Of a stretch of 64,000 bases of DNA, positions 3,213-64,000 are shown in pieces; positions within the stretch are counted from its first letter, which is position 1; each line of letters starts with the position of its first letter. The DNA lies in IMG/VR virus record IMGVR_UViG_3300023174_002543, positions 62,001-126,000 of that record; one strand, 5' to 3'. A program made the translations under genes and the position numbers. The notes under the pieces are model-generated. The model saw nothing but the letters and a program-made list of their open reading frames with translations, was not told the DNA's origin and did no database searches.

Positions 3213-3239
3213 GGCAATAATTACTATTACATAATAATG

Positions 3240-3246
3240 ATAAATA
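3240..3246 (+). promoter_or_regulatory. T4-type late promoter candidate ATAAATA
   Basis: Matches the T4 TATAAATA late -10 core; intergenic, after the terminator and 27 nt before the ATG at 3273. Confidence 0.7.
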
Positions 3247-3272
3247 CTCAATAGGATATATTCAAGGCAACC

Positions 3273-3983
3273 ATGGCAGCACCAGATCCATTCAATTCAG
3301 TAGGCGGTTATACAGTTGGAATCCCACCGCTACCAATTATTTCAGCTAATGGCAATATAAGTGCGGGTAATATCTCTGCTGATAATCTAACTATTACCTC
3401 TAATGTAACAGTCGGCGGAGATATTCGTGCGACCGGAGACATATATGGAGATACTTTTTATGGTAAGTTCGATGGCGCCATATCAGGAACATTAAATGTT
3501 CCGGGATTGTCTACTCAAATACTTTACAATACAAATGGTAATGCCGATGCTAGCCAAAATTTAACCTTTAATGCATCTACAAATACCCTTACTGTTCTAA
3601 ATGGATCTGTAACAGCTAATTCAATTACATTGGGTACAGGTCAAAATCAATTTAATACATCTTCTGTGTTTCGTTTAACTACATCTAGTACTGCACCTGA
3701 TCAAATATTAAATACAGTAAACGCATCTACAGTTTGTAGTATGGATTATATGATTATAGCAACTGATCCTGTAGCAAGCCGTAGACAAACAAGCAAAATT
3801 ATGGCTACTATATTAAACGGAAATGTTGAATATTATGAATACGGTACAATACAGGTACCTAATACAAGCCCGGGAGTCGCGGATCTTAAAGTGGCATATG
3901 TTGGTGGCAACGTTAATTTAACAGTAACACCTCTAACTAATAGTGTCAACTATAAAATAATGATAACAAGTTATAAAGAATAA
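3273..3983 (+). CDS. Virion fibre/decoration-like protein; N-terminal FNxxxG motif, C-terminal ~100-aa beta domain (here 'X')
   Basis: 236 aa; starts MAAPDPFNSVGGYTVG; C-terminal domain shared with 6026 and 10234. Confidence 0.6.
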   Translation: MAAPDPFNSVGGYTVGIPPLPIISANGNISAGNISADNLTITSNVTVGGDIRATGDIYGDTFYGKFDGAISGTLNVPGLSTQILYNTNGNADASQNLTFNASTNTLTVLNGSVTANSITLGTGQNQFNTSSVFRLTTSSTAPDQILNTVNASTVCSMDYMIIATDPVASRRQTSKIMATILNGNVEYYEYGTIQVPNTSPGVADLKVAYVGGNVNLTVTPLTNSVNYKIMITSYKE

Positions 3984-3994
3984 GGAAAACAAAA

Positions 3995-6013
3995 ATGGCA
4001 ATAAGAACATTTAATTCAGTGGCAGGTTTCTCAGTAGGTGAAGTACCAGAGACAATTATTACAACGACTGGTAACGTCACTACCGGTAACTTACTAACTG
4101 ACAATTTATATAAAGCAGACGGAGTAACTACATGGAATCTAAACGAAGCAGCAGGCTCTGTTAATCAGATTCAATTTAGTGACGGTAATGATTTAGATGC
4201 AAGCGCAAACTTAACATTTGTCGATGGTGCAAATCCAGTTTTAACTATCACAGGTAATGCTAACGTTACTAACGATTTGATTACATCAACTATTGTTACT
4301 GCCACCGGTGATCTTGTTATTGCTCCTGCAGCAGGTGGTGTTGTTAGTATTGCTGATACAGATGGAGGATCAACTGGTATTCAAGTTGGCACACCTACTG
4401 TAGGTAGTTTAACAAGCAATGCAGTTACTATGACTACTGAAACTAGTGTTACAGATGGCATTGCACAACTAAATGAAATCTTAGGTAAACTAGTTCCAGC
4501 TGCACCTCCTGATTTCCCTGCAAGTCAAACTATTGCAATTCAGAGTTTGTCATCATATCGTATGACTAACTTTACGCAAACTGATAATACTAGCACACAA
4601 GGTCATTCAGTAGCAGGTGGAACTACAGTTAACAAAATACGTAGAGCAAGTTCATATACTACTAACACTATAACAAATGCAGGTCCAGGCAATAACGGTA
4701 GAATTACTGCATATTTAAATGGTGTTGATGCTGGCAACGTGACATTAACTAATGCTCTTACTGGCGCAGGTACATATGGTAATTTAGTAATTACTAACAA
4801 TGTTGATTATAATGCAGTTAGCCCAAGCACACCTGCTGATTTTTGGAGTGTATTTTCAGCGACGGCAACTGGATCAGTAAGCCAAGGTTGGAATGAAGTT
4901 TATATACGTGATTCAGCAACTAATGCTAATACTAACGTAGTTCAATGGTATTATGATGCAAGTAATCCAGGTACACCGGTATTCAGTAGTACTTCAATTA
5001 CTGCACCAGTTAGTCCAACATTAACTTATTCAAGTACAATTCCACATTATGATTCTAGCAATCAATTTACTATTAATTTTAGTGTTAACAAACTAAGCGG
5101 TGATGTATATCCAACAAGCGATACATTTATAACAGGTACTGCAGGTGGCGCATTTAATGCCCCCGCTAGCGTAACATACGCAACGGCAGGTGTTACAACT
5201 CCATTAGCAAGAAATTTACATGTATCTAGTGGAACACAATCAGTAACAACTACTGCAGGTATTATTACTGGATTTGGTTCAAGTTCAGGTAGTCCTTCAG
5301 TAACGGTGAATAATAGTTATAATACTGCAAGTCAATCATTTGCTCCTGGTAAAACTGTACTATACAAGACAGGTACTGGTAGTTTAATGGAAGAAACTTC
5401 TATAACTATTGGTAGTACTATTGGTTCAGGTTCTGGATCAGCATCACGTATTGTTAATCCAGGTAGTGCAGATACACCGGCTATTTCAGCAAGTGCTTCT
5501 TTATTCAACAGTCAAACAGGCACGTTGCAAACATATGATGCAACAATTTCTGCCGGCGTACTAAAAAATGATGTGACTGATTATTCAACTGGATATTTTC
5601 CAGCTGGACCTAATTTAAGCGGTCAAGCTGCATCACAATATTTCACATTTAGATTTATTAGAACTTCTGTGAGTAAGTTTGATATTAAATGGACTGGTAC
5701 ACTTGCCGGATTATGGGTAGCATTACCAGGTAGTGTTATTGATACTAGCTCTACTTTGAACGGTTGGTTAACATTAGCTACTGCATATGCAGGAGCAGGA
5801 CAACCAGGTGCAGGAACTGGAGGTAACGGTAGTAACGGTGCTTCATTGGGTGGTACTGCTCCATTAGGAACGGCACAAACTAATAAGAGAATTACTGCAA
5901 CATTTGGTACTGCAAGTAGTTCAGGATCCGCAACAAATGAAATTTATGTAAGAATTAAATTAAACACTGGTCATTCAATCACGGCTCTATCATTAGAGAC
6001 AGCAAGCAATTAA
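3995..6013 (+). CDS. Virion structural protein, S/T/G-rich beta protein
   Basis: 672 aa; starts MAIRTFNSVAGFSVG; contains the NLYKADG..WNL..AAG..QIQF module shared with 6026 and 14047; AAGGA RBS. Confidence 0.6.
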   Translation: MAIRTFNSVAGFSVGEVPETIITTTGNVTTGNLLTDNLYKADGVTTWNLNEAAGSVNQIQFSDGNDLDASANLTFVDGANPVLTITGNANVTNDLITSTIVTATGDLVIAPAAGGVVSIADTDGGSTGIQVGTPTVGSLTSNAVTMTTETSVTDGIAQLNEILGKLVPAAPPDFPASQTIAIQSLSSYRMTNFTQTDNTSTQGHSVAGGTTVNKIRRASSYTTNTITNAGPGNNGRITAYLNGVDAGNVTLTNALTGAGTYGNLVITNNVDYNAVSPSTPADFWSVFSATATGSVSQGWNEVYIRDSATNANTNVVQWYYDASNPGTPVFSSTSITAPVSPTLTYSSTIPHYDSSNQFTINFSVNKLSGDVYPTSDTFITGTAGGAFNAPASVTYATAGVTTPLARNLHVSSGTQSVTTTAGIITGFGSSSGSPSVTVNNSYNTASQSFAPGKTVLYKTGTGSLMEETSITIGSTIGSGSGSASRIVNPGSADTPAISASASLFNSQTGTLQTYDATISAGVLKNDVTDYSTGYFPAGPNLSGQAASQYFTFRFIRTSVSKFDIKWTGTLAGLWVALPGSVIDTSSTLNGWLTLATAYAGAGQPGAGTGGNGSNGASLGGTAPLGTAQTNKRITATFGTASSSGSATNEIYVRIKLNTGHSITALSLETASN

Positions 6014-6025: not shown

Positions 6026-8329
6026 ATGGCAATATCAGACGCACAAAAAGTAGACCTGTTATTTAAACAGGCATTCGGTGTAACTAAAACAGATACATCG
6101 ACTAATAAAAGTCCAAGTAATGAAGCTATTGCTAGTCCAGCGATAGTTCGCGGCGATAAAATTTGGAGTCAATCCGATCAGATACCAGGAACAGCGGCGG
6201 TCACTAGTGGAATTGTTGAACTTAAAAAGGTAGAATGTACCATTGATAATACTACTGTTCCTATAGGAGGTATTTACCCTACTTGGAAGACTGCATATAC
6301 TAATTGGATTCCTGTAGAATTTGGTCCTACATATTCTGTAAAAGTTTACGTTAATAATACTGGACAAAGTGCTGATCCTAGCGCAGGTGGTACGCAAATA
6401 TTTGATGCTGGTGTAGGTGGAGTAGGTGAATTTTACTTTAACTATAGCTCAGGCGTACTAAACTTTATTGGTGGCACGATACCTGCAGCATTGACAGGTA
6501 GTAAGAAGATTTATGTAGTTGGTTATAGATATATAGGTAGCGTTGGCTCTGCCGCACTACCATCAAATACTAATATTGGTAACATTAATATTACCGGTAA
6601 TACAATTAGTACTACTGACAATAATGGTAATACTGTTATAAGTGGTAATGGTACAGGTGGTGTAGAAATTGGTGGTACTGGTAATCTATATGCTACTAAC
6701 TTTATCGCTAGCGGTAATGTATATACTGATTCACTATTATATGCAAACGGTCAAGCATGGGACTTGCAAGAAGCAGCCGGTACTGATGGACAAATACAGT
6801 TCAACACCGGTGATAATTTTGCTGCAGATGCAAATTTATCATTCGACAGCGGTAACGCTAATCTAAAGATTATTGGTAATATTAACGTAGGTAGTACTGG
6901 TAATATAAAACTATACGGTAATGGCGCAATTAGTGCAACATCTATTAATGCTAATATAAGCGGTGACGTTGCTAATATTGGTGCTAACCTAAATGTATTG
7001 TACAATTATAATGGTAAGCTATCAAGTAATTCTACATTCCAATACACACCAGGATCAAATGCATTAACAGTTGGTAATAGTGTTACTAGTAACTACTTTA
7101 TTGGTAAATTTGATAGTACATCAAGTAACCAGTCAAATATTACTACATTAGGTAACTTAACAGTATTACAAGTTGGTAATACATCTACTACCGGCATTGT
7201 AAAACTTGACACAAATGGTAATGCTAATGCAGTTAACTTTAATGCATCAGGTGACATCAATGCAGTAAATGCAACATTCACTGGTAACTTAACTGTAACC
7301 GGTACAACTACATTCGTAAACACAACCGTTACTAGTATCAAAGATCCATTATTAACCTTAGGTGGTAATACTGACGGTGGTAATGCTACTTCATATGATG
7401 GTAAAGATAGAGGTTTAGTATTAGATAACTATACGAATGGTGTAACTCCTGGCCCATTAAATCAAGCATTCATTTGGAGAACATCTACTGGTCAATTTGA
7501 AGTTGGTGCAAACGTAGAAGTAACAGATAACGTTGTTGATATAAAACAATATGGAAATATAAAGGCATTAACATTCAAGGGTAATATTGATGCAACTAAT
7601 ATTGCAGGTACTCTTACTACTGCAAGTCAACCAAATATCACTAGTGTTGGTACATTGACCAGTGCAAATATTTCTGGATTGGCTAACGTAAGTCAATTAA
7701 AAGTTGGCGCAGTAATTTATCCCAATGTTGTAGGAACAGATGGTCAATATTTAAGAATAAATGCTACAAGTAATACAGTATATTATAGCAGTTTAGATAC
7801 AAGTAAAGTAGCAAATGGTACTACAGAGATAGAGTTATTAGAAGACAGTGATATAACATTTACAGTCGACGGAATAGCTAATGTTGTCATATTCAACACT
7901 GACGGAGCAAATATTGATGGTAACGCAAATGTATCAGGTAATGTAAATGCAATCGGCTCATTGAATGCGGATAGCGCAAATGTAACAAATGTTGTTATTG
8001 GTAATAGTAGCATTAGGGCCGCTACAGTAACTACTACTACAACATCATTGACTACCTTAGTAGCGTTAGACGCAGGTACATTTAGAGGTGTAGAATTTAT
8101 AATTAAGGGTGAAAATTCAACTGGTGGTAGATACAGTATTGCTACTATATTAGCAGTACACGACGGCGACAATCCGGTTGCAGTAGACTTTACTTCATAT
8201 GGATTAGTTAATTTAGGTGGTCAAACCGGAGTACTTACAGTAACCGGAGACGTAGATACAGTATATTTAAAAGTAACACCTAATAGCAATCAGTCAACTA
8301 TTTGGACAATTCAGTATAGACTAATCTAA
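6026..8329 (+). CDS. Fibre-like structural protein ending in domain X
   Basis: 767 aa; DP..G..DG.DRG module, TASQPNITSVGTL repeat, C-terminal X domain. Confidence 0.6.
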   Translation: MAISDAQKVDLLFKQAFGVTKTDTSTNKSPSNEAIASPAIVRGDKIWSQSDQIPGTAAVTSGIVELKKVECTIDNTTVPIGGIYPTWKTAYTNWIPVEFGPTYSVKVYVNNTGQSADPSAGGTQIFDAGVGGVGEFYFNYSSGVLNFIGGTIPAALTGSKKIYVVGYRYIGSVGSAALPSNTNIGNINITGNTISTTDNNGNTVISGNGTGGVEIGGTGNLYATNFIASGNVYTDSLLYANGQAWDLQEAAGTDGQIQFNTGDNFAADANLSFDSGNANLKIIGNINVGSTGNIKLYGNGAISATSINANISGDVANIGANLNVLYNYNGKLSSNSTFQYTPGSNALTVGNSVTSNYFIGKFDSTSSNQSNITTLGNLTVLQVGNTSTTGIVKLDTNGNANAVNFNASGDINAVNATFTGNLTVTGTTTFVNTTVTSIKDPLLTLGGNTDGGNATSYDGKDRGLVLDNYTNGVTPGPLNQAFIWRTSTGQFEVGANVEVTDNVVDIKQYGNIKALTFKGNIDATNIAGTLTTASQPNITSVGTLTSANISGLANVSQLKVGAVIYPNVVGTDGQYLRINATSNTVYYSSLDTSKVANGTTEIELLEDSDITFTVDGIANVVIFNTDGANIDGNANVSGNVNAIGSLNADSANVTNVVIGNSSIRAATVTTTTTSLTTLVALDAGTFRGVEFIIKGENSTGGRYSIATILAVHDGDNPVAVDFTSYGLVNLGGQTGVLTVTGDVDTVYLKVTPNSNQSTIWTIQYRLI

Positions 8330-8333: not shown

Positions 8334-8347
8334 ATAAGTATATAAAT
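8334..8347 (+). promoter_or_regulatory. Late promoter-like ATAAGTA / TATAAAT
   Basis: Intergenic ATAAGTA immediately followed by TATAAATG overlapping the start codon. Confidence 0.4.
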
Positions 8348-12542: not shown

Positions 12543-13094
12543 ATGGCTAATAAGTATTTTAACGTAAGACAAGGTCTCCAGACCGGAAATATAACGTTAG
12601 ACGCCACGACGGGAAATGCCAATGTAGGCAATTTGTCCACTACGGACTTGAACGTAGCTGGAAACTTAAATTCGAACCTAATACCTAAGGTCGCATCTGG
12701 CGTACCTTCAGTTCTGTCATTAGGTACCAATCTACAACGATTCAAAGATTTATATCTGTCAGGAAATGTCAATCTTCCTGGTGGACAAACACTCACTGGC
12801 AATACGGATACTGCTAGTTTTTCTGGGAATGTATATACCCCAGGTGCACTAACAGCAAACGTCATAAATGCCAACACTATAGCAGTAAATACAGAATTTA
12901 CGCTAAATAGTACTATAAATTCAACTTCTACTGATACTGGTGCATTTACAACTATGGGCGGAATCGGAGTGAAGAAGGATGTAACAGTGGGGGGTGCTAT
13001 TAATTTAGCCAACTTTGCTGTTACAGGAACAACAGTTAGAAGCAGCATTTACCATGATGATACTTCTAACTCAATAACGTTTAAATTTAATTGA
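12543..13094 (+). CDS. Short fibre-like connector protein ending SITFKFN
   Basis: Track starts at TTG 12531; ATG 12543 gives MANKYFNVRQG, which matches the paralogous N-termini; C-terminus matches that of 14047. Confidence 0.6.
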   Translation: MANKYFNVRQGLQTGNITLDATTGNANVGNLSTTDLNVAGNLNSNLIPKVASGVPSVLSLGTNLQRFKDLYLSGNVNLPGGQTLTGNTDTASFSGNVYTPGALTANVINANTIAVNTEFTLNSTINSTSTDTGAFTTMGGIGVKKDVTVGGAINLANFAVTGTTVRSSIYHDDTSNSITFKFN

Positions 13095-21783: not shown

Positions 21784-21784
21784 T

Positions 21785-49106: not shown

Positions 49107-49110
49107 AAAG

Positions 49111-49117: not shown

Positions 49118-49133
49118 CATTATAGGAAAAATT

Positions 49134-49550
49134 ATGAACAAAAGTTATTTAACAGAAGTGTTTGGCGCACAAGAAGGATTTGTATACGAATACACAGGAA
49201 CTGTTCCTGAGGGAATTAATCCTGAATCCGCCGAAATGTCGGAACATGTAACACTAGATTTCTTAGCAGGGCACGGTGATAATTTAATTGCTACTAGAGT
49301 AGTTCAGTTTCCATATCAACATAATAAAATTTTGCTTTATGCAAAAACAGATATGGATATGAATACATCAAGTGAATTTGCATTAATATCACATTTAGTC
49401 CCGGACGTAATAGTTGCCCCAGTAGAAGTTCAACAACCAACTGAAACTTCTGAGACAACTGAAACTGCTGAGACAACTGAAACTGCTGAGACAACTGAAA
49501 CTGCTGAGACAACTGAACCTTCAACAGATTCAAACGAACAAGGACAATAA
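49134..49550 (+). CDS. Acidic hypothetical protein with a TETAET repeat tail
   Basis: 138-aa ORF, E/T-rich C-terminus. Confidence 0.55.
   Translation: MNKSYLTEVFGAQEGFVYEYTGTVPEGINPESAEMSEHVTLDFLAGHGDNLIATRVVQFPYQHNKILLYAKTDMDMNTSSEFALISHLVPDVIVAPVEVQQPTETSETTETAETTETAETTETAETTEPSTDSNEQGQ
49440..49517 (+). repeat. 18-bp coding tandem repeat, 4.3 copies
   Basis: ACTGAAACT(T/G)CTGAGACA x4 plus ACTGAA. Confidence 0.9.
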
Positions 49551-49551
49551 A

Positions 49552-50385: not shown

Positions 50386-50397
50386 GAGAATAAAAAT

Positions 50398-57900: not shown

Positions 57901-60900
57901 AACAATAATAATGCAATTACAGGCACAGTTACCAGTTTACTAGCATTGCAAAATTCAACTACCTTAGATGCAAGTTCAAATAATTTAACATTAACTGCTA
58001 CCGGTAGCCCAACAGTAAGTTCAACAGTTGTTCCTTTTCTACCTGGTGTAAATGGTTATAGCACTTACTTTAATGGTACTACTGATTATATTCAGATGCC
58101 CATCCCAACATCAGCCGCTACTGCTGCAAATGGGCAGTTTACGCTTGAAACATGGATATATTGTACTAATATCTTAACTAATCCTTTTATTGTAAGTTCT
58201 TGGTATTTCTCAACTCCGTTGTCAAGTTCATGGCAATTGCAATTGTTTAATGGTTATTTACAATTTGGTTATGGAATTGGTAGTGTTACTAATACTATAA
58301 CCGGTACTACTAGAACAGTTTCATCTAGTACATGGACTCATGTTGCAGTAACAAGAGATTCAAACAATCTTATTACTTTCTATGTGAATGGTATAGCAGA
58401 TGCCACTACAACAACTGTAGTAGGTACATTTAATACCAACGTTAATCAAGGTGTAAGAATAGGATCAGGTGTTGGTTCTGGTCAGGCTTGGTTATTGGGA
58501 TTTCAAGGATATATCAGTAACTTAAGATTTGTCAGAGGTATAACTGTATACACCGGTGCATTCACACCACAAACAACACCATTAACTGTAACACAAAGTT
58601 CAGGTACTAATATTAGTGCAATTTCTGCTGCCGCATCAAATGCATATAGTCTTGCATTTGTTGGCAATAACGGTGCAGCATTAGCCAACGTTAATATTCC
58701 GCAATATCTTAGCGTATCAGGTGGGTCGTTATTCAACTTTGGTACAGGTAATTATACAATTGAATGCTGGGCATATGCAAATACTATTAGTGATGGTAGA
58801 ACTATATTCAATATGTATTCAAGTTTTTTTGGAACCTTTATCAGATATGCAAGCACAACCGGATGGCAACTATATTATAATGCCGGTGGAAGTTCAACTA
58901 CCTATACTTTTAACAGTACCAATAGTGGACTTGGTTTTTGGGTTCATCATGCACTAGTTAGGTCTAGTGGTACACTATATTGGTATATTAATGGAGTGAA
59001 TGTGTTCAGTGTAGCAGAGTCTACGAATTATGTATACACTACATTAGATATCGGATATTATAATTCACCTACATACAATTGGAGCGGATTCATTAGTAAC
59101 TTTAGAATTGTTAAAGGAACTGCAATCTATACTAGTGGTACAGCATCATTTACCGTACCTACTTCCCCGTTGACTGCGGTTGCAGGCACATTGATATTAA
59201 CTGGACAAAATGCAACTATCGTTGATAACGGTACTGCAAACTTTGGTGCTAGCTTTACTATTTTTAATAATAACGCAGTTACAACCACTGCACTTATTTC
59301 TCCGTTCATAAGTGGAAATACACAATTATTATTGTTGCAATCTCCCACATTATTTACATCAATGACTGATGCTGGACCTAGTAACTTTATGGGAACAGTT
59401 ACAGGATTACCAGTAGTTAATACTACTAGTATGACATTTTCACCGTTCTTGAATGCTAACGGACGTAGTGTATTCTTTACAGGAAGCAGTCAATATATAA
59501 CTGCACCAAGCAACAGTGTATTTACATTTGGTACAGATGATTTTACTATTGAGGGTTGGATATATTTAGTAAATGGTACTACAAGTGGCACATTATATGA
59601 TGCCAGAACAGGTTTAACTACCGTTAGCGCACAAATTTACATTCAATCAAACATTGTTAATTATGCAGTGGCAGGTGTTAGTGTCATTAATTCTAGTACA
59701 ACAATACAACCATTAAGTACTGCAACATGGTATCACATCGCAGTGGTTCGTATTTCAAATGTAACAAGATTATATGTAAACGGGTTGCAAGCAGGTAATA
59801 GTTATGTAGATAATAATAACTATGTTATCGGTGCACCGTATATTGGTACCGGCTTCGGTTCTAGCAATCCATTGAATGGATATATTAGTAATCTACGTGT
59901 AGTTGATGGCACCGGAGTATATTCAAATAGTTTTGTTGTTCCAATTACACCATTAACAAGTACACAAAGTAGTAGTTCAAGTATTATAGCATTGAATAAT
60001 GCAACACCAGTTTTAGGTAATAGTGTTTATTTTAACGGCGCTAGTGATTATATGAAAGTTTCTGGTGTAGTGTCTTTCATGAATACAGGCGACTTTACAA
60101 TTGAAACATATTACTATCCAACTAGTTTTGCAGCAGTCACTACATTATTTGGTCAATATACAGCCGCAACAACAGCATTGGGCTATTGGAACGTTCAAAT
60201 AACTACTGCAGGTATTATAACGGTATACTATAATGGTTCTACTAACTTTCCTGCAAGTACTGCAATTTTTGTTAATGAATGGGTACATATTGCACTAGTA
60301 AGAATTAGCGGTACTATTACATTATATGTTAACGGGGTAAGTTACGGAACAGCGAGTTTTGCAACTCAGTTTGGTTTAACAAGTATCTCATCACCGTTAT
60401 TTATTGGTGCAACACAGTTAAGTGGACCAGTGCAATATGCGTTAGGTTATATGAGTAACTTCCGTATTGTTAAAGGTTTAGGTGTTTATACAGGAGCATT
60501 TACAGTACCAACTAGCCCATTAGGTAGTACACAAAGTTCAGGTACTAATATCGCTGCAATAACCGGTACAAGTACAAGTTTACTTCTATTCCAAAATTCA
60601 CCTTATACCGACAATAGTACATTCAATAATCCTATAACAGGTTTTGGTAATCCATTATATTCACCAGTATTCAGTCCATCATTCTTTAGTTATCCAACTC
60701 CGGCAAACGGTAATAGTGGTTACTTCAATGGTTCAACTTCATATCTATCACTAACACAACCTAGCAATGCAAGTACAGGTGATTTTACAATTGAATTATG
60801 GGCTTATCCTACATCACTTACCGCTATAGGTTATTTAATGAGCACAAGCACTGCTGCATCTACTGCTTCTACTACTAACGGATATGTAGCATTAAACGGT

Positions 60901-63900
60901 ACAACTCAATATCTAACTGTACCTTCTAATAACGGATTTGTTTTTGGTACAGGAGATTTCACAATTGAATGTTGGGTACTAACTAGTCAGGCGGCTACGA
61001 ACGGTGCATCAACAACGGATAGATTCATATTTGGTGCTATTGGAAATACTCCTTCATGGTCTATATATCTTCAAAACGGTGCTACATTAATACCTAATTT
61101 TTATTCACCAACCGGATCTGTGGCTAGCTCAATATCTGTTTCAACGGGTGTTTGGACTCATATAGCGGTCGTAAGATATAGTGGAAACATGTATATATAT
61201 GTTAACGGTGCATTGGGAGGTACTGTAGCAAATAATACTAACTATACTGCTAGTGGAACACAATATATAGGTCGTGCTGATGATGCTGCTAATAAATTCT
61301 TCAACGCAAATATTTCTAACTTAAGAGTTGTAAAAGGTACAGCAGTTTATACTGGTGCATTCTCAGTACCAACATCACCGTTAACCGCTATACAACTTTC
61401 AGGATTGAACATATCGGCCATTAGTGCAGGTGTTGCAGGAACTAGTGGCACACAATTATTAGCATTACAGTCTGCTCTTACTACTGATGCTAGTGTGAAT
61501 GCACTTACATTAACTGCCATAGCTACTCCAACATTTACTGCCTCAGGTGGTCCAATCACCGGTAGCCCTCTTAGCGCAGGTTCTTTCCATCTATGGATAG
61601 CCACTAACGGTACAGTAAATTTGGCTGTAGATCAGGCTGCTGTAAGTATTGTTAGTGTATTCCCTTCAGTGGCTAAACAAAATACATGGACACATGTTGC
61701 GATTACACGAACCAACGGCGTAGTATATTTATTTGTCAATGGTTATAGAGTGGCTTCATCACTAGCTAAAACAACATTGTGGGGTGGTACTGATACATTA
61801 AACATTGGTCGTTATCAGCCAAGTGGAAATCAATACTTTGTAGGATATATCACTAACGTGAGATTTGTATATGGAACGTCAGGAATATACACAAGTAATC
61901 CATTAACTCCACCTTACACTACACCATTGACTGCTGTTACAGGTACAACATTGTTATTGTTACAATCAACACTAACTAAAGATAATAGTGCTAATAACGT
62001 AACAGTTACAAATAATAATGTGATATTATCAACGTATACCAATCCGTATACAACAATGAAGTTGCCATTCTTATTAAGTGCTCAAAATGGATATGGTATC
62101 AATGCCGGCACCGTAGTAAGAGATAATAGTATATTTAACACTTCATTACAAAGTACCAGCACTAGTTATGTAACATATATGGCTGCAGTAAGTCCTTTTG
62201 GAGTGACCCCCACTCTACTAGTTGGTCAATCAGCCATGCAACGTGATGAAAGTATCAACAGCCTAGTTCCACAAACAATTACCACAACAGCCACAATAAT
62301 GCCTTATGTAACACCATTCAGTGGTAATGCAGTTGCATTTAACGGCAGTACAAGTTATATTACTGGTACTAACTTATACAACAGTTTGGGCGGGGACTTC
62401 ACAATTGAATTCTTTATGATGGCAGGTCCACAAACTGCTACAGTCGGTGGATTACTGTTAGGCAGAAACATAAGCTGGTCTACTACAAATAATAATTATT
62501 ATATCATGTGTAGTTCACCCGGTGGAGTTGGGAAAAACTCATTACAAACTATACAAATTTATAACCCGCTTATTAGTATAACTTCACCTGTGTATTTAGG
62601 ATTAACCTCGGTTTGTGATAGCAAATGGCATCATATTGCTATTGTAAGAATTAATGGTATTGTAAAAATATACATCGATGGAGTATTAGATACAAGTCCG
62701 TTTAGTAGCTTTGCGAATACGGGTATTTGGGACTATAGCAATTATACTATTGGTAGTAATCCAAATGACGCTGGGTCAACAGTAGCCCAATTAGCATACA
62801 ACGGTATGTTAAGTAACTTGCGTATTATTAATGGTACCGGTATTTACACAGGCACGTTCACCCCTCCTACAAATAACTTAACAACATCACAATCTAGTAG
62901 AACAAATGTTGTTCAATATACATCAACAACACCAAGTTCAACAGGTTATAGTTTGCAATTTAATTCAGCGACTGGTAGTTATCTAACTACAACCTATTCC
63001 CCTGTACTAAGTTTAGGAACAAATGACTATACGATTGAGTTCTGGCACTTCTTATCAGGTAAATCAGCAGCAAATCAACCTTGTTTGTTCAGTAATGCTA
63101 ATAGTTCTAGTGCTGGCGTTTTAAATATGTATGCCGGACATGCTAGTGCCAATGTACTAAAATATCAACTTGCATTTAACACTCAGTCGGTAATAGCTAC
63201 TTATATAACCATGCAAAGTGTATCAAATATCATCTATGGCAAGTGGACACATATTGCATTGGTAAGAAGATCAGGGGTTGTGTATCTATATATTAATGGT
63301 ACACTTGATTCTACTAGCGGTTTAGGTAATTATTCTGTATACAGTTCTCAATGGTACATAGGTAATGATGTGACAAATTCAGCTTTAGGATATATTTCTG
63401 GCTTCATCAGCAACTTCCGTGTCACAAACGGTCTAGCAGTTTATACCGGTAACTTTACAGTACCAACTAGTGCATTAACAACAACACAAAGTTCAGGTAC
63501 AAACATTGCTGCAATAACCAATACAAGTCTGGCTAATGGTGGTGCAATATCTATTGTAGCCAGTGGTTCACAATATATAAATACCACCATGGTATTAACA
63601 ACTGCAACCACTAACATGACAGTTGAGGCTTGGGTAAATTTCACTTTATTCCCAACGTCAAATACTTGGATAGGTGGCACTGCAACTATTTTTAGTACAA
63701 GCGGTAATAGTTATTCAAGCGGTATACATTTTGTATTAGGTTCAACTAATATATATGTTGTAATAACAAATACTGTATACGGTGGTTATGCACACAACAT
63801 GGTTGCTGGAACTTGGTATCATCTTGCGTATGTTATAAATAACGGGGTCGTTACATTCTTTATAAATGGTATTTCTGTGGGTAGTATATCAGGTATCCCT

Positions 63901-63999
63901 GTTACTTTTGGAGCACCTAGTTATTCTGTAATAGGTGCATCTGATACCAGCGGATCATATGGTATCGGTAGTATTGGTGGCGGTAGCGTTGGGTACATT
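51949..63999 (+). CDS. Giant multi-LamG/ConA-like adhesin-like protein, at least 4017 aa, truncated by the window end
   Basis: ATG 51949 (MADSSLSSLALSTY); manual translation of many segments gives 18 xTxE.W cores in the same frame up to ...GSVGYI. The track lists no + ORF here, as expected if there is no in-frame stop inside the window. Confidence 0.9.
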   Translation, partial: MADSSLSSLALSTYSTNTYYSTWFSGTGYLTIPAGSQLEFGANNFTIELWWYPTSTVRQAIYHGSFGTDWSVGIDYNSVSTNKIGIWASSNGTSWNLINSDAAGNGIGTITPTQNAWNHIAYVRNGTTWSLYVNGVVSVNITGLSGTIVSRSASTKAIGCWWSTGAMSQIQGYVSNFRILNGTALYTTAFDPPIQQLTAIANTVLLTCQNITSIDNSTANGGVGFAITRNSTTIGVRQFTPPLLVTSSATLTPTYNSGTLTYTFSAPTNISVIRVIPTANDAANASIKFNGNVTLTSGQPTVASAAPYLNSGYSANFVSGLLQTAHNTNLNIAGYAWTIEFWTYITTSSLTCIFFTKKASGASTGIAYQGGLQSGVPSFSQAGSTSFVNTGIRMPLNAWTHVVYVYDGGVASTSTGNISVYFNGEKVVNFVVNTFVDNTEPLTIGGSRGLTEWTIGNISNFRMVKGYQLYNGNFTPPTQPYGLTQPASAGVPAIISSDINSGFFSGTNAYLTVPGTNITNIFTGDFTIEAWLYPTAAFGASWVTADGGFSEIPVMICNASPTALNYYWAFGPSSTGTVRFITSSIYFNTVTSTATCTVNAWNHLALVKIGTTYKIYVNGIGTSGTTITTSPGTAFSDAVGISIGANNNKYVTGYISNARIVKGTAVYTENFRPSITPLTAISNTSLLVLQNRLTSDASTNNLTLTNTNVTVNTSITPFVLPVTSLVQPNGSSVFFNGSTSLSGSADFTATGNFTIECWIYPTVSTECDILKIGNEATGRIVFGTGLPAAGNLFYNIYGGSSIVIATGISTNTWQHVAIVRIGTTLTGYINGVAGTPVTGVSGTLGNTSGFSTMTTGTGYITNLRYVVGTALYTSNFNVYNSPLVTITNTKLLILQSSVTTDSSTNNYTLTPTSPAPTLSTTITPFITYGAASTQFLSTALAYQTVANPYSLALSMGQGHNNFTAEAWVYLTASPGGAPGAFIMQKGTGATGGVEWAFSVYNTGIYFTYVSGIPTGTTTSNSITANIVTGRWMHLAFTKVGTSLHFWLNGTYVYTLNGVNNLYYTAQYNSYFTVANNQAASGAAFPGFISNARVVYGKAIYTTNYDAPFIPSTTPLTVTQTATSSIASIDNANSYNIVNGNSVFFNGTNDFLTFPEPANLFNSALFNGTNQFLILNSASPGPAFAFGTGDFTIEFYFNGPPQTNRFFYDNRPSSPNGYPHVTTGLTTSVLRWGPTNLQGSIIIGDNKWHHCAVTRESGTIKLWIDGVLDTSGSDTTNYSTNYGVYIAFDSVPSTWLAGFLSNYRIIKGTALYTTNFTPSTTPLTRTSQGAIASQVSLLTLQNPTIVDNSTNAFTITNSGTPSTPTSLNHPFALYVGDGTNVTIEAWIMLGSVPTAPRGFIINNSATTTGYFGIAVESGTTNAARSISVWSDSNATSVLASTTLVPLYTWTHVAVMFANNLITVYINGVRDATTVAKTTIWQAATLGTVYIGRQASTAAQYFPGYITNLRVVYGTALYSINTVKFTVPTGPLTAITNTVFLGLQSSVTFDASTNNATITKGSGATGLILAPLTSPFQTYLPSVTNGYSIGLGFLGSGANDYISYIFGNGVAGIQMTGDFTVETWVFLPQYPSNRIAILNSQNTANDAGAGWDILSTGQVSFNSGGNTWLSSTTFIGINTWYHLALTRQNSTVRLWINGVQDVTTGTTTVSFAQPSTNVIYIGRNASGLVGNAYFSNYRWFIGTCLYTGTFTPSLTPYATTTNANANVSAVNGITSYPNIGSYGLTYSGSISMTNAGHAVTSTTVGTYTGYWDLATYDFTVEAWFNNTLMTGFGSITAIVIAGNGANASDNAWSLSTTKSSLTQATLIFSSGGSGQAQQLTHTTPTLNINSNQWYHVAVVRIGITHTIYLNGLPVSVFILSSGQLMGATAMPSTYAKIAIGSNLSNGTVTQPFNGYISNVRAIKGYGVYTGQFLPSTSPLTNTQSAVNNNNAITGTVTSLLALQNSTTLDASSNNLTLTATGSPTVSSTVVPFLPGVNGYSTYFNGTTDYIQMPIPTSAATAANGQFTLETWIYCTNILTNPFIVSSWYFSTPLSSSWQLQLFNGYLQFGYGIGSVTNTITGTTRTVSSSTWTHVAVTRDSNNLITFYVNGIADATTTTVVGTFNTNVNQGVRIGSGVGSGQAWLLGFQGYISNLRFVRGITVYTGAFTPQTTPLTVTQSSGTNISAISAAASNAYSLAFVGNNGAALANVNIPQYLSVSGGSLFNFGTGNYTIECWAYANTISDGRTIFNMYSSFFGTFIRYASTTGWQLYYNAGGSSTTYTFNSTNSGLGFWVHHALVRSSGTLYWYINGVNVFSVAESTNYVYTTLDIGYYNSPTYNWSGFISNFRIVKGTAIYTSGTASFTVPTSPLTAVAGTLILTGQNATIVDNGTANFGASFTIFNNNAVTTTALISPFISGNTQLLLLQSPTLFTSMTDAGPSNFMGTVTGLPVVNTTSMTFSPFLNANGRSVFFTGSSQYITAPSNSVFTFGTDDFTIEGWIYLVNGTTSGTLYDARTGLTTVSAQIYIQSNIVNYAVAGVSVINSSTTIQPLSTATWYHIAVVRISNVTRLYVNGLQAGNSYVDNNNYVIGAPYIGTGFGSSNPLNGYISNLRVVDGTGVYSNSFVVPITPLTSTQSSSSSIIALNNATPVLGNSVYFNGASDYMKVSGVVSFMNTGDFTIETYYYPTSFAAVTTLFGQYTAATTALGYWNVQITTAGIITVYYNGSTNFPASTAIFVNEWVHIALVRISGTITLYVNGVSYGTASFATQFGLTSISSPLFIGATQLSGPVQYALGYMSNFRIVKGLGVYTGAFTVPTSPLGSTQSSGTNIAAITGTSTSLLLFQNSPYTDNSTFNNPITGFGNPLYSPVFSPSFFSYPTPANGNSGYFNGSTSYLSLTQPSNASTGDFTIELWAYPTSLTAIGYLMSTSTAASTASTTNGYVALNGTTQYLTVPSNNGFVFGTGDFTIECWVLTSQAATNGASTTDRFIFGAIGNTPSWSIYLQNGATLIPNFYSPTGSVASSISVSTGVWTHIAVVRYSGNMYIYVNGALGGTVANNTNYTASGTQYIGRADDAANKFFNANISNLRVVKGTAVYTGAFSVPTSPLTAIQLSGLNISAISAGVAGTSGTQLLALQSALTTDASVNALTLTAIATPTFTASGGPITGSPLSAGSFHLWIATNGTVNLAVDQAAVSIVSVFPSVAKQNTWTHVAITRTNGVVYLFVNGYRVASSLAKTTLWGGTDTLNIGRYQPSGNQYFVGYITNVRFVYGTSGIYTSNPLTPPYTTPLTAVTGTTLLLLQSTLTKDNSANNVTVTNNNVILSTYTNPYTTMKLPFLLSAQNGYGINAGTVVRDNSIFNTSLQSTSTSYVTYMAAVSPFGVTPTLLVGQSAMQRDESINSLVPQTITTTATIMPYVTPFSGNAVAFNGSTSYITGTNLYNSLGGDFTIEFFMMAGPQTATVGGLLLGRNISWSTTNNNYYIMCSSPGGVGKNSLQTIQIYNPLISITSPVYLGLTSVCDSKWHHIAIVRINGIVKIYIDGVLDTSPFSSFANTGIWDYSNYTIGSNPNDAGSTVAQLAYNGMLSNLRIINGTGIYTGTFTPPTNNLTTSQSSRTNVVQYTSTTPSSTGYSLQFNSATGSYLTTTYSPVLSLGTNDYTIEFWHFLSGKSAANQPCLFSNANSSSAGVLNMYAGHASANVLKYQLAFNTQSVIATYITMQSVSNIIYGKWTHIALVRRSGVVYLYINGTLDSTSGLGNYSVYSSQWYIGNDVTNSALGYISGFISNFRVTNGLAVYTGNFTVPTSALTTTQSSGTNIAAITNTSLANGGAISIVASGSQYINTTMVLTTATTNMTVEAWVNFTLFPTSNTWIGGTATIFSTSGNSYSSGIHFVLGSTNIYVVITNTVYGGYAHNMVAGTWYHLAYVINNGVVTFFINGISVGSISGIPVTFGAPSYSVIGASDTSGSYGIGSIGGGSVGYI

Positions 64000-64000
64000 A

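What the first reader, a model, noticed from the sequence alone, without database searches (positions are those of the whole stretch)
3213..64000. More than 60 kb of adhesin/fibre genes directly after gp23: candidate 'hairy' capsid or sheath coat
Seen: no gp24, hoc, soc, replication or metabolic gene follows gp23. Instead there are 34 co-oriented, mostly structural-looking genes holding 26 LamG cores, four Gly-rich domains and a propeller. Established: T4 has gp24 here and only a few fibre genes, while some T4-related jumbo phages (e.g. vB_PcaM_CBB, Atu_ph07) carry hair-like fibres on head and tail. Inference: this is too many genes for a six-fold tail-fibre set and may encode a surface coat for particle or mucus attachment or broad host sampling. 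The short 398-aa gp23 may belong to that wider lineage (from memory, untested).
Basis: partly seen in the sequence, partly recalled or inferred. Interest (0 to 1): 0.65.

Follow-up and report, generated by a model that had tools for sequence, protein, structure and literature searches.

The report
Giant fibre-and-adhesin gene array after gp23
An uncultured 367-kb freshwater jumbo phage gives a fifth of its genome (73 kb, 35 genes directly after the capsid gene) to fibres and sugar-binding adhesins, one of them 8,153 residues long; these most likely let the particle grip host surfaces, but sequence alone cannot tell whether they sit on the tail, the head or both.

Summary
The window is bases 62,001-126,000 of a 367,104-bp IMG/VR phage genome rated 100% complete by CheckV. 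Its 398-aa Gp23-family capsid protein is 65-68% identical to those of PA5oct, Vibrio phage 2.275.O, Asteriusvirus and Phosso.

After a terminator-like hairpin behind gp23, 34 co-oriented ORFs fill the rest of the window. The block ends 12.4 kb beyond it: 35 ORFs by my whole-genome call, 24,922 aa and 73 kb in all. It holds:
- at least 10 paralogous repeat fibres in five N-terminal classes;
- four Gly-rich proteins, one modelled as a Pam3 gp24 / Bxb1 tail-tip-type receptor-binding head;
- a beta-propeller;
- a CBA120 TSP4 XD1 domain;
- LamG bead strings of 1, 6 and 34 domains.

Baseplate, sheath and a classical long-tail-fibre-like gene lie elsewhere in the genome. Relatives share the array, reshuffled and diverged.

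Best reading: a hyper-expanded, modular host-adhesion arsenal grown from the fibre-gene slot that cultured relatives have behind gp23. The "hairy coat" placement is not shown, and the evidence is split. Folds and annotations point to the tail. A conserved gene pair homologous to phiCbK gp73/gp74, also present in capsid-hairy Atu_ph07, points to the head.

The parts
183..818 (+). Prohead maturation protease (T4 gp21-like). Context, not part of the array.
   Evidence: Pfam Peptidase_S77 1.7e-28; phrog_207 3.2e-61.
830..1930 (+). Scaffold-like protein (E/K/A-rich). Context.
   Evidence: phrog_10922 1.5e-85; composition; 33-42% identical to the gene in the same position in Vibrio phage 2.275.O and PA5oct.
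1961..3157 (+). Major capsid protein, Gp23 family, 398 aa.
   Evidence: Pfam Gp23 1.9e-98; 65-68% identical to the capsid proteins of PA5oct, 2.275.O, Asteriusvirus and Phosso; the only Gp23-family gene in the genome.
3189..3212 (+). Intrinsic-terminator-like hairpin (GAGCAC-TTCG-GTGCTC followed by TTTTTATT) between gp23 and the array.
   Evidence: Sequence read directly; consensus scan. Function is inferred.
3273..3983 (+). Short fibre, 236 aa, N-terminal class N5 ('FNSVGGYTVG'), with a C-terminal knob.
   Evidence: N- and C-termini; 43-52% identical in relatives, sometimes as the C-terminus of a longer fibre. No family hit.
3995..6013 (+). Most conserved array protein, 672 aa. Homologue of phiCbK gp073 and candidate anchor or adaptor. 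The C-terminus is a beta-sandwich followed by a jelly-roll (CBM-like).
   Evidence: More than 1,370 homologues, the best 120 being 55-94% identical; phrog_8578 3.4e-90; phiCbK gp073 33.5% over 526 aa, E 1.4e-55; AF2 model is poor (pLDDT 57.7) and fold matches stay at Z<7.
6026..8329 (+). Fibre, 767 aa. Residues 1-~230 are a conserved phiCbK gp074-like domain; the rest is variable repeat shaft and a knob.
   Evidence: phrog_9417 5.2e-26 on aa 1-177; phiCbK gp074 34.7%, E 3.9e-17; N-terminus 37-62% identical in relatives and always directly after the 3995 homologue.
8346..10232 (+). Fibre, 628 aa, class N5. Its N-terminal module is widespread in proteins mostly annotated as tail fibres. It shares its C-terminal 386 aa with 19408-21783.
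   Evidence: PHROG hits are mixed (head decoration, tail fibre, virion protein). tblastn hits are mostly annotated 'tail fiber', one 'head decoration'. 52% identical to 19408 over 386 aa.
10234..12510 (+). Repeat fibre, 758 aa, class N1 ('DAATKEYVD'), four 'QPNITS' repeats, C-terminal knob.
   Evidence: Paralogy; sequence; motif counts.
12543..13094 (+). Short fibre-like protein, 183 aa, class N5. ATG 12543 is a likelier start than TTG 12531.
   Evidence: Translation.
13108..14004 (+). Protein with a single LamG domain, 298 aa.
   Evidence: Pfam Laminin_G_3 2.2e-10.
14047..19137 (+). Long repeat fibre, 1,696 aa, class N2.
   Evidence: Paralogy with the other fibres. No family hit.
19408..21783 (+). 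Repeat fibre, 791 aa, class N2. C-terminal domain shared with 8346-10232.
21785..22714 (+). Fibre/adaptor, 309 aa: class N1 N-terminus, a DUF4183 module, a Gly6 linker, then a C-terminal XD1 domain.
   Evidence: PDB 7REJ (CBA120 TSP4-N) residues 70-174, E 4.5e-14. XD1 spans residues 80-178 and has the fold of T4 gp9 and gp10 domains. DUF4183 1.7e-5.
22714..23964 (+). Ig-like stalk, 416 aa (TIG + He_PIG), with a weakly LamG-like C-terminal half. Overlaps the next gene by ATGA.
   Evidence: Pfam; weak LamG-core similarity, E 0.03, with no Pfam hit.
23961..24851 (+). Gly-rich receptor-binding head, 296 aa (TNF-like sandwich plus glycine-rich lattice).
   Evidence: Pfam Gly_rich_2 1.9e-25. AF2 pLDDT 90.9. 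VIA-align: Bxb1 tail tip 9d93_Qa Z 13.6, Pam3 gp24 fibre 7ypx_A Z 12.7, next group Z about 6.
24926..26491 (+). Repeat fibre, 521 aa, class N3.
26501..26857 (+). Small conserved protein, 118 aa, role unknown (possible assembly factor).
   Evidence: phrog_7759 8.2e-37, function unknown. The role is inference only.
26949..30137 (+). Repeat fibre, 1,062 aa, class N3, six 'QPNITS' repeats.
30139..30510 (+). Small 123-aa protein, paralogue of 41919-42281. Lies between a fibre and a Gly-rich head.
   Evidence: 48% identical to 41919.
30513..31664 (+). Gly-rich head, 383 aa.
   Evidence: Pfam Gly_rich_2 9.7e-9; 27% Gly.
31680..36494 (+). LamG bead string, 1,604 aa: Ig-like N-terminus (class N4) and 6 LamG_3 domains.
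   Evidence: Pfam Laminin_G_3 7.6e-101 in 6 stretches, He_PIG; a LamG domain is similar to phiCbK gp076, E 7e-10.
36505..39801 (+). Repeat fibre, 1,098 aa, class N3.
39811..40140 (+). Small 109-aa protein whose stop overlaps the start of the next Gly-rich gene.
   Evidence: phrog_1276, and phrog_693 (N-terminus of a tail-fibre family); gene spacing.
40140..41087 (+). Gly-rich protein, 315 aa. Membership of the same fold is unproven.
   Evidence: 30% Gly; hhalign against the Gly_rich_2 profile gives only 7% probability; ALK_LTK_GRD E 0.53.
41117..41917 (+). Short fibre, 266 aa, sharing its C-terminal part with 26949-30137.
41919..42281 (+). Small 120-aa protein, paralogue of 30139-30510.
42281..43426 (+). 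Beta-propeller protein, 381 aa.
   Evidence: Pfam Lactonase 7-bladed propeller 2e-11 (over its cut-off) and WD40-type hits.
43443..44150 (+). Short fibre, 235 aa, class N3, with its own C-terminal knob.
44156..45034 (+). Gly-rich head, about 292 aa. ATG 44156 is a likelier start than TTG 44111.
   Evidence: 33% Gly; hhalign against the Gly_rich_2 profile gives 83% probability, E 8.5e-6; phrog_4474 2.2e-35.
45475..48510 (+). 1,011-aa structural protein shared with T4-like cyanophages.
   Evidence: phrog_5838 1.2e-296; 43-45% identical over its full length to S-PM2d173, S-RSM4 and other records annotated 'virion structural protein' or 'fiber protein'.
48537..51918 (+). Four ORFs (189, 138, 277 and 506 aa) with no family match. 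T/S/N-rich like the fibres.
   Evidence: No PHROG or Pfam hit; composition.
51949..64000 (+). First 4,017 residues of an 8,153-aa string of 34 LamG domains. The ORF ends at window coordinate 76410, outside the window.
   Evidence: ORF length. Pfam Laminin_G_3: 18 stretches in the window part and 16 in the rest. Internal DNA repeats at most 75.6% identical.

Best explanation
The block is the phage's host-adhesion arsenal. It is a late structural gene array grown out of the small fibre-gene slot that cultured relatives have behind gp23. It encodes many different surface fibres and adhesin heads, most or all of which end up on the virion.

How it is built:
- Shafts are assembled from one shared repeat family ('..AQPNITSVGTL..GNLVSANY..').
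- The shafts carry five kinds of N-terminus, so about five kinds of docking site can be presumed.
- Distal modules are interchangeable: TNF-like/glycine-rich heads of the Pam3 gp24 kind, knobs, a beta-propeller, an XD1 domain, and strings of 1, 6 or 34 LamG lectin domains.

How it would work (inferred): many weak, different glycan- or surface-binding sites give multivalent, reversible first contact with host envelopes, sheaths or appendages. Module shuffling between relatives retunes specificity.

Anchoring: the highly conserved pair 3995-6013 plus the N-terminus of 6026-8329 is the constant anchor on which variable parts hang.

Location is not shown. My estimates: 0.5-0.55 that the Gly-rich and XD1 cassettes form a branched set on the tail or baseplate, and about 0.4 that at least the gp73/gp74-anchored fibres and the LamG strings are capsid- or neck-borne filaments.

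Shown: gene content, folds, paralogy, conservation pattern and synteny. Inferred: virion incorporation, binding function, anchoring and location.
For: Structural context: the array follows the protease-scaffold-capsid genes on the same strand with gaps of at most 115 nt.

Fibre nature: more than ten paralogous T/S/G/N-rich repeat proteins. PHROG hits are to tail-fibre and virion-structural families.

Receptor-binding heads: the AF2 model of 23961-24851 (pLDDT 90.9) matches the Bxb1 tail tip (Z 13.6) and the Pam3 gp24 receptor-binding part (Z 12.7), against about 6 for the next group. [quoted passage not shown]

Lectin domains: 25 LamG_3 in the window and 41 in the block.

Assembly or glycan-binding module: an XD1 domain, E 4.5e-14 to CBA120 TSP4-N.

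Virion relatives: the 1,011-aa protein is 43-45% identical to cyanophage proteins annotated as virion structural.

Receptor-binding-type evolution: in relatives whose capsid protein is 79-93% identical, head genes stay 60-93% identical while the fibre genes are 30-60% identical and reordered. The 3995 / 6026-N pair stays adjacent and 37-62% identical. LamG strings of 1,016-4,525 aa lie 10-60 kb downstream of the capsid gene in three relatives.

Ancestral slot: CBB_260/261, Asteriusvirus A4_14-16, Vibrio phage 2.275.O tail-collar and short-tail-fibre genes, and PA5oct gp324 all follow the capsid gene.

The genome is real and recurrent: CheckV 100%; identical contigs in two studies.
Against: No protein of this phage has been seen in a virion. 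Every virion or location statement rests on homologues or on annotations.

Half of the ORFs have no family match.

No tail-fibre chaperone family (Tfa type) and no XD2/XD3 docking domains were found by the scans run.

The Asteriusvirus post-capsid genes are positional, not sequence, counterparts (no BLASTP hit).

The anchor idea got no support from the complex prediction, which gave no answer. The model of 3995-6013 is poor.

Two of the four Gly-rich proteins are not securely in the Pam3-like family.
Confidence: 0.72

Rival explanations
1. One reading: the products form a 'hairy' coat of fibres on the capsid and/or the sheath, in addition to a normal tail-fibre set encoded elsewhere.
For: Related jumbo phages have such hairs, and the genes responsible are unknown: phAPEC6 has fibres at hexamer centres and at three sheath rings, CBB has them on the tail, and Atu_ph07 mainly on the capsid.

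This genome has separate loci for the baseplate (gp5-like, gp6-like and a 5,727-aa neighbour), for the sheath, and for a 1,976-aa fibre with a Peptidase_S74 chaperone domain.

The conserved pair 3995 / 6026-N is homologous to phiCbK gp73/gp74. In phiCbK these lie after the capsid genes and beside gp76, the proposed head filament. Among 50,697 phage records the gp74-like domain occurs only in phiCbK-like phages, Atu_ph07, Phosso and SCTP-2.
Against: The link between gp76 and the head filament is itself only a proposal; neither gp73, gp74 nor gp76 was detected in phiCbK virions.

The solved look-alikes of array modules are tail parts.

A terminator-like hairpin right after gp23 argues against capsid-level copy numbers for a dense coat (inference).

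No Hoc- or Soc-type decoration family was hit. One PHROG labelled 'head decoration' is outnumbered by tail-fibre labels for the same module.
Confidence: 0.27
2. All array products belong to one hyperbranched tail-fibre tree on the baseplate, as in RaK2, phiKp24 or CBA120, but with lectin-type rather than enzymatic tips.
For: There are precedents for 10-14 fibre proteins in one branched baseplate apparatus.

The array has an XD1 domain and Gly-linkers like CBA120 TSP4-N, a Pam3 gp24-like head, and a few shared N-terminal classes suggesting a few docking sites.

The post-gp23 slot holds genes annotated as tail fibres and chaperones in cultured relatives.
Against: No depolymerase-type domain was hit by the family scans, and XD2/XD3, the known branching modules, were not found.

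The genome already has fibre candidates next to the baseplate and sheath genes.

An 8,153-aa string of 34 LamG domains is unlike any described tail-fibre branch.

The gp73/gp74 synteny points away from the tail.
Confidence: 0.33
3. The array is a library of alternatives: only a subset is built into any one particle, or some products are not virion parts at all (assembly factors, decoys, or proteins acting on the infected cell surface).
For: Several small ORFs (118, 123, 109, 120 and 141 aa) and four ORFs without any match (48537-51918) lie between fibres and heads. Members of one N-terminal class could compete for one site.
Against: All genes are intact, tightly packed and co-oriented. There is no invertase or reverse transcriptase for switching or diversification. 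Relatives keep comparably large arrays.
Confidence: 0.12
4. Assembly chimera: the array was joined to a phage head module by metagenome misassembly.
For: The genome is a metagenome assembly. Only 3070-7500 was checked against other runs.
Against: An 8.3-kb contig and shorter contigs with 0 differences occur in two studies. Relatives 5-12% diverged are colinear there. Composition and strand are uniform. IMG/VR relatives have the same order capsid gene, then fibres, then LamG strings. Repeats are too diverged to collapse.
Confidence: 0.03

Closest known systems
Branched multi-protein tail-fibre systems of jumbo and Ackermannviridae phages (RaK2 gp098 and gp526-534; phiKp24, 14 fibres; CBA120 TSP1-4)
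   Same: Many receptor-binding genes are clustered. The N-terminal parts are modular. One protein here has the XD1 domain of CBA120 TSP4 behind a glycine linker.
   Different: No depolymerase-type domain was hit here; the tips are LamG, Gly-rich, knob or propeller modules. XD2/XD3 were not found. The block is far larger (73 kb, 24,922 aa). It lies after gp23, with baseplate genes elsewhere.
Pam3 gp24 tail fibre, S16 gp38 adhesin and Bxb1 tail-tip Gly-rich proteins
   Same: 23961-24851 models as a TNF-like sandwich plus glycine-rich lattice: Z 12.7-13.6, 33% identity over about 165 residues. Pfam Gly_rich_2 is present in two ORFs.
   Different: These proteins lack the N-terminal alpha-helical docking shaft of Pam3 gp24. 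Most homologues instead carry TIG + He_PIG domains in front. No gp25/Tfa-like chaperone was found downstream. There are four diverged copies rather than one.
phiCbK gp73-gp74-gp76 locus (gp76 is the proposed head filament)
   Same: It has homologues of gp73 (E 1.4e-55) and gp74 (E 3.9e-17), adjacent and in the same order. They lie downstream of the capsid gene and are accompanied by a giant protein with a ConA/LamG domain and by glycine-rich sequence.
   Different: phiCbK is a siphophage with an unrelated capsid gene. It has one 2,799-aa protein instead of some 30 genes. The gp74-like domain is fused to a fibre here. The head-filament assignment has never been demonstrated.
'Hairy' jumbo myophages phAPEC6, vB_PcaM_CBB and Atu_ph07
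   Same: They belong to the same capsid-protein supergroup (64-66% identity to Asteriusvirus and Phosso). Fibre genes follow the capsid gene in CBB and Asteriusvirus. Atu_ph07 has the gp74-like domain inside its own fibre-like cluster.
   Different: The genes for their hairs are unknown, so no gene-level comparison is possible. The post-capsid genes of Asteriusvirus have no BLASTP match here. Their fibre slot is 2-8 kb, not 73 kb.
Giant LamG-repeat virion proteins of T4-like cyanophages (PHROGs 701, 18802, 1469, 32294)
   Same: The same LamG_3 bead architecture, with strong profile matches (up to 5.3e-281). A neighbouring 1,011-aa protein is 43-45% identical to cyanophage virion proteins.
   Different: Only the LamG parts of those profiles are matched, not their 'baseplate wedge' parts. 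At 8,153 aa this protein exceeds the longest matched profile (6,136 positions). The genome has no psbA.

Membership tests
Rak2-like / Asteriusvirus / Arenbergviridae supergroup of T4-related jumbo myophages | A Gp23-family capsid protein of about 390-400 aa, closely related to theirs | tested here: met
   Pfam Gp23 1.9e-98; 64-68% identity over the full length.
Rak2-like / Asteriusvirus / Arenbergviridae supergroup of T4-related jumbo myophages | Shared order: late sigma factor, SbcCD-like nuclease, baseplate hub, structural protein, portal, protease, scaffold, capsid gene | tested here: met
   tblastn and BLASTP of window and upstream proteins against the PA5oct and 2.275.O loci.
Branched (hyperbranched) tail-fibre or tailspike complexes | T4 gp10-like XD domains that dock one fibre on another | tested here: inconclusive
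   One XD1 domain was found (21785-22714 aa 199-306, E 4.5e-14 to 7REJ). XD2/XD3, the domains shown to mediate binding, were not detected by Pfam, PHROG or PDB sequence searches. No structure-based search was run for them.
Branched (hyperbranched) tail-fibre or tailspike complexes | Enzymatic (depolymerase) receptor-binding bodies | tested here: not met
   No lyase, hydrolase or beta-helix family was hit in any array ORF.
Branched (hyperbranched) tail-fibre or tailspike complexes | Attachment to the baseplate | not testable with these tools
   Needs EM or proteomics of particles.
TNF-like + glycine-rich receptor-binding heads (Pam3 gp24 / Pfam Gly_rich_2) | Glycine-rich motif lattice on a TNF-like sandwich | tested here: met
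   Met for 23961-24851: AF2 pLDDT 90.9, Z 12.7 to 7ypx_A residues 97-280. Pfam over its cut-off for 23961 and 30513. 44156-45034 is probable. 40140-41087 is inconclusive.
TNF-like + glycine-rich receptor-binding heads (Pam3 gp24 / Pfam Gly_rich_2) | N-terminal helical shaft docking to the baseplate, with a downstream Tfa-like chaperone | tested here: not met
   The model has only about 22 disordered residues before the head. No chaperone family was hit nearby.
phiCbK-type capsid-proximal filament locus (gp73-gp74-gp76) | Adjacent gp73 and gp74 homologues downstream of the capsid gene, with a giant ConA/LamG- and Gly-rich protein nearby | tested here: met
   E 1.4e-55, 3.9e-17 and 7e-10 respectively; same order and strand.
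phiCbK-type capsid-proximal filament locus (gp73-gp74-gp76) | The products form a filament on the head | not testable with these tools
   Not demonstrated even for phiCbK.
Capsid decoration proteins (Hoc/Soc type) | Match to a decoration family | tested here: inconclusive
   No Pfam decoration family was hit. phrog_2647 'head decoration' hits 8346-10232 aa 55-260 (2.2e-29), but the same module is mostly annotated 'tail fiber' in phage records.

The most novel reading that the evidence does not exclude
The gp73-like / gp74-like pair is a portable anchor for capsid-borne filaments. It is shared by phiCbK-like siphophages (head filament), Atu_ph07 (capsid hairs) and this widespread freshwater jumbo-phage clade. 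Under this reading the clade mounts on its head a variable forest of fibres and lectin strings up to 8,153 residues long. The pair would give the first gene-level handle on phage head filaments.
Probability: 0.25. Interest if true: 0.8.

Novelty: new variant of a known kind. Interest (0 to 1): 0.58.

Why it matters
Multi-fibre adsorption machines and 'hairy' jumbo phages are known. The genes behind the hairs and behind the phiCbK head filament are not.

This locus offers three things:
1. An extreme case: 20% of a complete 367-kb genome, and an 8,153-aa protein with 34 lectin domains. It shows how far a phage can invest in non-enzymatic adhesion.
2. A whole abundant, uncultured freshwater clade in which the array is conserved in place but reshuffled in content. 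That makes it a natural experiment in receptor-binding evolution.
3. A concrete, testable candidate for a filament anchor (gp73/gp74 homologues) that links three otherwise unrelated groups of phages.

If the anchor idea holds, head filaments of phiCbK and Atu_ph07 become genetically tractable.

Tried and rejected
(1) Early idea that the 1,011-aa protein (45475-48510) is the counterpart of PA5oct gp324 and Vibrio NVP2275O_464, marking a conserved end of a variable slot. This is wrong. It is a cyanophage-type virion protein, and NVP2275O_464 is a DNA polymerase.

(2) PDB sequence search with the Gly-rich protein found only chance hits, E>0.1. The fold search was needed.

(3) Structure of 3995-6013: AF2 mean pLDDT 57.7. 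The wide PDB search gave only generic beta-sandwich and CBM-like matches at Z<7. The ESM Atlas gave nothing usable.

(4) Complex prediction of 3995 (aa 137-672) with 6026 (aa 1-230): no answer, score 0.00 against a mark of 0.32. This is neither evidence for nor against binding.

(5) Diversity-generating retroelement: no reverse transcriptase in the genome.

(6) Cyanophage host hint: no psbA. The host remains unknown.

(7) T4-type late promoter TATAAATA: only 4 copies in 78 kb, not placed before genes. The sigma-70 scan is at or below shuffle expectation.

(8) The 'moraphage' aquatic jumbo lineage (PMC12619734) is a different, non-T4 group.

(9) Read laying shows presence and colinearity only. 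The runs are contigs, so within-population hypervariability could not be tested.

(10) The 26th LamG core (C-terminal half of 22714-23964): no Pfam hit, only E 0.03 by BLASTP.

(11) The big representative-protein search was not used. No claim here rests on the absence of relatives.

Full report
**What the window is.** The window is bases 62,001-126,000 of a single 367,104-bp contig. The contig is an IMG/VR virus record that CheckV rates 100% complete. GC content is 36-40% with a steady positive GC skew. Public runs that hold the first 9 kb are freshwater, lake, wetland and river metagenomes from 12 studies. Contigs with 0 differences cover 3070-7500 in runs of two different studies. Relatives 5-12% diverged are colinear there. 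This is therefore an uncultured freshwater jumbo phage that recurs in nature.

**The head module and lineage.** ORFs 183-818, 830-1930 and 1961-3157 encode a gp21-type prohead protease, a scaffold-like protein and a 398-aa Gp23-family capsid protein. The capsid protein is 65-68% identical over its full length to those of Vibrio phage 2.275.O, Pseudomonas phage PA5oct (Arenbergviridae), Sinorhizobium phage Phosso and the 121Q-like Asteriusvirus group. Upstream gene order matches PA5oct and 2.275.O: late sigma factor, SbcCD-like nuclease, baseplate hub, structural protein, portal, small proteins, protease, scaffold. The genome has only one Gp23-family gene, so no gp24-like vertex paralogue exists anywhere.

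**The array.** A 115-nt gap follows gp23. It contains a terminator-like hairpin, GAGCAC-TTCG-GTGCTC followed by TTTTTATT. After it, 34 co-oriented ORFs fill the window, with gaps of -40 to 91 nt. The last ORF runs off the window. In the genome it is 8,153 aa long (window 51949-76410) and is followed by ribonucleotide reductase genes. By my whole-genome gene call the block has 35 ORFs, 24,922 residues and 73 kb, a fifth of the genome.

Pfam finds 25 Laminin_G_3 domains in the window (1 + 6 + 18) and 16 more in the rest of the giant ORF, which thus has 34. Its internal repeats are at most 75.6% identical at DNA level. They are old duplications and not an assembly hazard.

Four ORFs contain 27-33% glycine. 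One ORF is a beta-propeller. No replication, metabolic, Hoc, Soc or gp24 family was hit.

**Anatomy.**

- *Repeat fibres.* At least ten ORFs are paralogues built from one repeat family, '..TTAAQPNITSVGTL..GGNLVSANY..'. They are 6026, 10234, 14047, 19408, 21785, 24926, 26949, 36505, 41117 and 43443. Two more copies lie elsewhere in the genome.
- *N-terminal classes.* The N-termini fall into five classes:
  - N1: 10234, 21785
  - N2: 14047, 19408
  - N3: 24926, 26949, 36505, 43443
  - N4, Ig-like: 22714, 31680
  - N5, 'FNSVGG(Y/F)SVG': 3273, 3995, 8346, 12543

  C-terminal modules are swapped among them.
- *Cassettes.* The order suggests repeated cassettes of fibre(s), a small 109-123-aa protein and a Gly-rich protein. 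Several starts overlap the preceding stop.
- *Gly-rich head.* The protein 23961-24851 was modelled with 43 homologues (pLDDT 90.9). It matches the Bxb1 tail-tip chains (Z 13.6, rmsd 3.0 Å, 167 residues, 33% identity) and residues 97-280 of the Pam3 gp24 tail fibre (Z 12.7). The next group, the ALK/LTK glycine-rich domains, scores about 6. In Pam3 that part is the TNF-like plus glycine-rich receptor-binding head, related to the S16 gp38 adhesin (PMC9608196). Most of its 1,565 homologues are about 470 aa long, with TIG and He_PIG domains in front. Here that stalk is a separate upstream ORF.
- *XD1 domain.* Residues 199-306 of ORF 21785-22714 lie behind a Gly6 linker. They match residues 70-174 of CBA120 TSP4-N (7REJ, E 4.5e-14). 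This is the XD1 domain, which has the fold of domains in T4 gp9 and gp10 and also of glycan-binding domains of secreted proteases (PMC8825819).
- *Cyanophage-type protein.* The 1,011-aa ORF 45475-48510 is 43-45% identical over its full length to proteins annotated as virion structural or fibre proteins in T4-like cyanophages.

**Where the ordinary tail genes are.**

| Gene | Genome position | Evidence |
|---|---|---|
| gp5-like hub/lysozyme | within 19-50 kb, minus strand | |
| gp6-like wedge | within 19-50 kb, minus strand | phrog_10646 1.2e-246; |
| 5,727-aa structural protein | 21,233-38,416, minus strand | |
| 406-aa protein with the N-terminus of PA5oct tail fibres gp316-318 | 19,190-20,410 | |
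| Sheath, 1,211 aa | 299,515-303,150 | phrog_10581 3.6e-203; |
| Fibre with a Peptidase_S74 chaperone domain, 1,976 aa | 285,740-291,670 | |

The phage therefore has plausible standard baseplate and fibre genes apart from the array.

**Comparative evidence.** IMG/VR holds at least 598 loci encoding a relative of this capsid protein. The best 80 are 79-93% identical. In every one with enough downstream sequence, fibre genes of the same families follow gp23. They are only 30-60% identical and appear in a different order, while head genes are 60-93% identical. Three larger relatives carry LamG strings of 1,016-4,525 aa on the same strand, 10-60 kb downstream of the capsid gene.

Two elements are constant. 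One is ORF 3995-6013, which has more than 1,370 homologues; the best 120 are 55-94% identical. The other is the first ~230 residues of ORF 6026-8329, always directly behind it.

In cultured members of the supergroup the same position holds a few genes annotated as tail fibres:
- CBB_260/261
- Asteriusvirus A4_14 with two chaperones
- tail-collar and short-tail-fibre genes in 2.275.O
- gp324 in PA5oct

The array thus looks like a roughly ten-fold expansion of an ancestral fibre slot. The Asteriusvirus genes are positional, not sequence, counterparts.

**The head-or-tail question.**

Pointing to the tail:
- The only solved look-alikes are tail fibres, tail tips or baseplate-complex domains.
- Most annotated relatives of the 8346 N-terminal module are called tail fibres.
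- RaK2 and phiKp24 show that 10-14 fibre proteins can share one baseplate apparatus, so gene number alone says nothing.
- The terminator after gp23 argues against capsid-like copy numbers (inference).

Pointing to the head or sheath:
- Relatives are hairy. phAPEC6 has fibres at hexamer centres and at three sheath rings, CBB along the tail, and Atu_ph07 mainly on the capsid. The genes are unknown in all three.
- The constant pair of the array is homologous to phiCbK gp73 (33.5% over 526 aa, E 1.4e-55) and gp74 (E 3.9e-17). In phiCbK these two lie just after the capsid genes and just before gp76. That protein is 2,799 aa long, has a ConA-lectin domain, is glycine-rich, and was proposed but never shown to be the head filament. 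Its LamG domain matches the strings here (E 7e-10).
- Among 50,697 phage records the gp74-like domain occurs only in phiCbK-like Caulobacter and Brevundimonas phages, Atu_ph07, Phosso and Salicola SCTP-2. In Atu_ph07 it sits in its own fibre-like cluster.
- As of late 2025 the proteins of such head fibres were still unidentified.

This co-occurrence with head filaments rests on two lineages and on a proposal. It is a lead, not a finding.

**Conclusion.** I am fairly confident (about 0.7-0.8) that the block encodes virion-borne, modular host-adhesion fibres and heads, and that it evolves like receptor-binding genes. Where they attach cannot be decided from sequence. Attempts to test the anchor in silico failed: the AF2 model was poor and the complex prediction gave no answer. 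No reverse transcriptase or psbA is present, and the host is unknown.

The feature is a new, extreme variant of known kinds (branched receptor-binding arrays, hairy jumbo phages), not a new category. Its main value is the scale, the natural diversity available in a widespread clade, and the testable gp73/gp74 anchor hypothesis.

Noticed in passing
window 3189-3212: A strong terminator-like hairpin (GAGCAC-TTCG-GTGCTC followed by TTTTTATT, with an A-run before it, so possibly bidirectional). It sits in the only sizeable gap (115 nt), right after the capsid gene, and probably lowers expression of the array relative to gp23.
   Followed up: partly
genome 21233-38416 (minus strand; outside the window, locus L084): A second giant gene of 5,727 aa (phrog_10938 'virion structural protein', 1.1e-223) lies directly next to the gp6-like baseplate wedge gene. 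With the 8,153-aa ORF, the phage has two proteins longer than 5,000 aa.
   Followed up: partly
genome 299515-303150 (locus L094:14515-18150, minus strand): The tail sheath protein is 1,211 aa, but only residues 651-1207 match sheath profiles. The roughly 650-aa N-terminal extension is unexplained and could be an outward-facing or fibre-holding domain.
   Followed up: no
genome 285740-291670 (locus L094:740-6670, minus strand): A 1,976-aa fibre with a C-terminal Peptidase_S74 intramolecular chaperone domain and similarity to a long-tail-fibre distal subunit. It lies between the sheath gene and a He_PIG protein and is a candidate for the 'ordinary' long tail fibre.
   Followed up: partly
genome about 155.2-164.5 kb (locus L089:10234-19493): A cluster of 18 tRNA genes, all on the + strand. 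One has an Ile-type tRNA with anticodon TAT.
   Followed up: no
window 22714-24851: The Ig-like stalk (TIG + He_PIG) and the Gly-rich head are two ORFs overlapping by ATGA. Most of the 1,565 homologues are single proteins of about 470 aa with all three domains. Here about 220 extra residues (weakly LamG-like) and a stop separate them.
   Followed up: partly
window 45475-48510: A 1,011-aa protein is 43-45% identical over its full length to virion proteins of marine T4-like cyanophages (Kyanoviridae). The capsid gene belongs to a different supergroup and the genome lacks psbA. This suggests exchange of structural genes between phage lineages.
   Followed up: partly
window 12531-13094 and 44111-45034: The ORF finder's TTG starts are probably wrong. 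ATG 12543 gives an N-terminus like that of 8346 ('MANKYFNV..'). ATG 44156 lies 5 nt after the previous stop, instead of overlapping it by 40 nt.
   Followed up: partly
window 49134-49550: A small 138-aa protein ends in acidic 'TETAETTE' repeats. It and its three neighbours (48537-51918) have no match in Pfam or PHROGs.
   Followed up: no
whole genome (G000): There is no second Gp23-family gene, so the capsid vertices are made either by the same capsid protein or by an unrecognised protein. The highly conserved 672-aa protein two genes after gp23 (with 3273-3983 in between) was not tested for such a role.
   Followed up: partly
locus L102 (Atu_ph07, record 240955-259449): In Atu_ph07 the gp74-like domain heads a 712-aa protein. 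This protein sits in a run of co-oriented genes: an S8 protease, a 'tail fiber protein', several hypothetical proteins of 300-700 aa and a 'hemagglutinin'. The run looks like a smaller counterpart of the array in a phage with capsid hairs.
   Followed up: partly
genome 271657-273942 (locus L093:3657-5942, minus strand): The phage encodes a 761-aa AAA+ protein matching the PHROG family labelled 'ATP-dependent protease' (phrog_4871, 9.5e-229).
   Followed up: no
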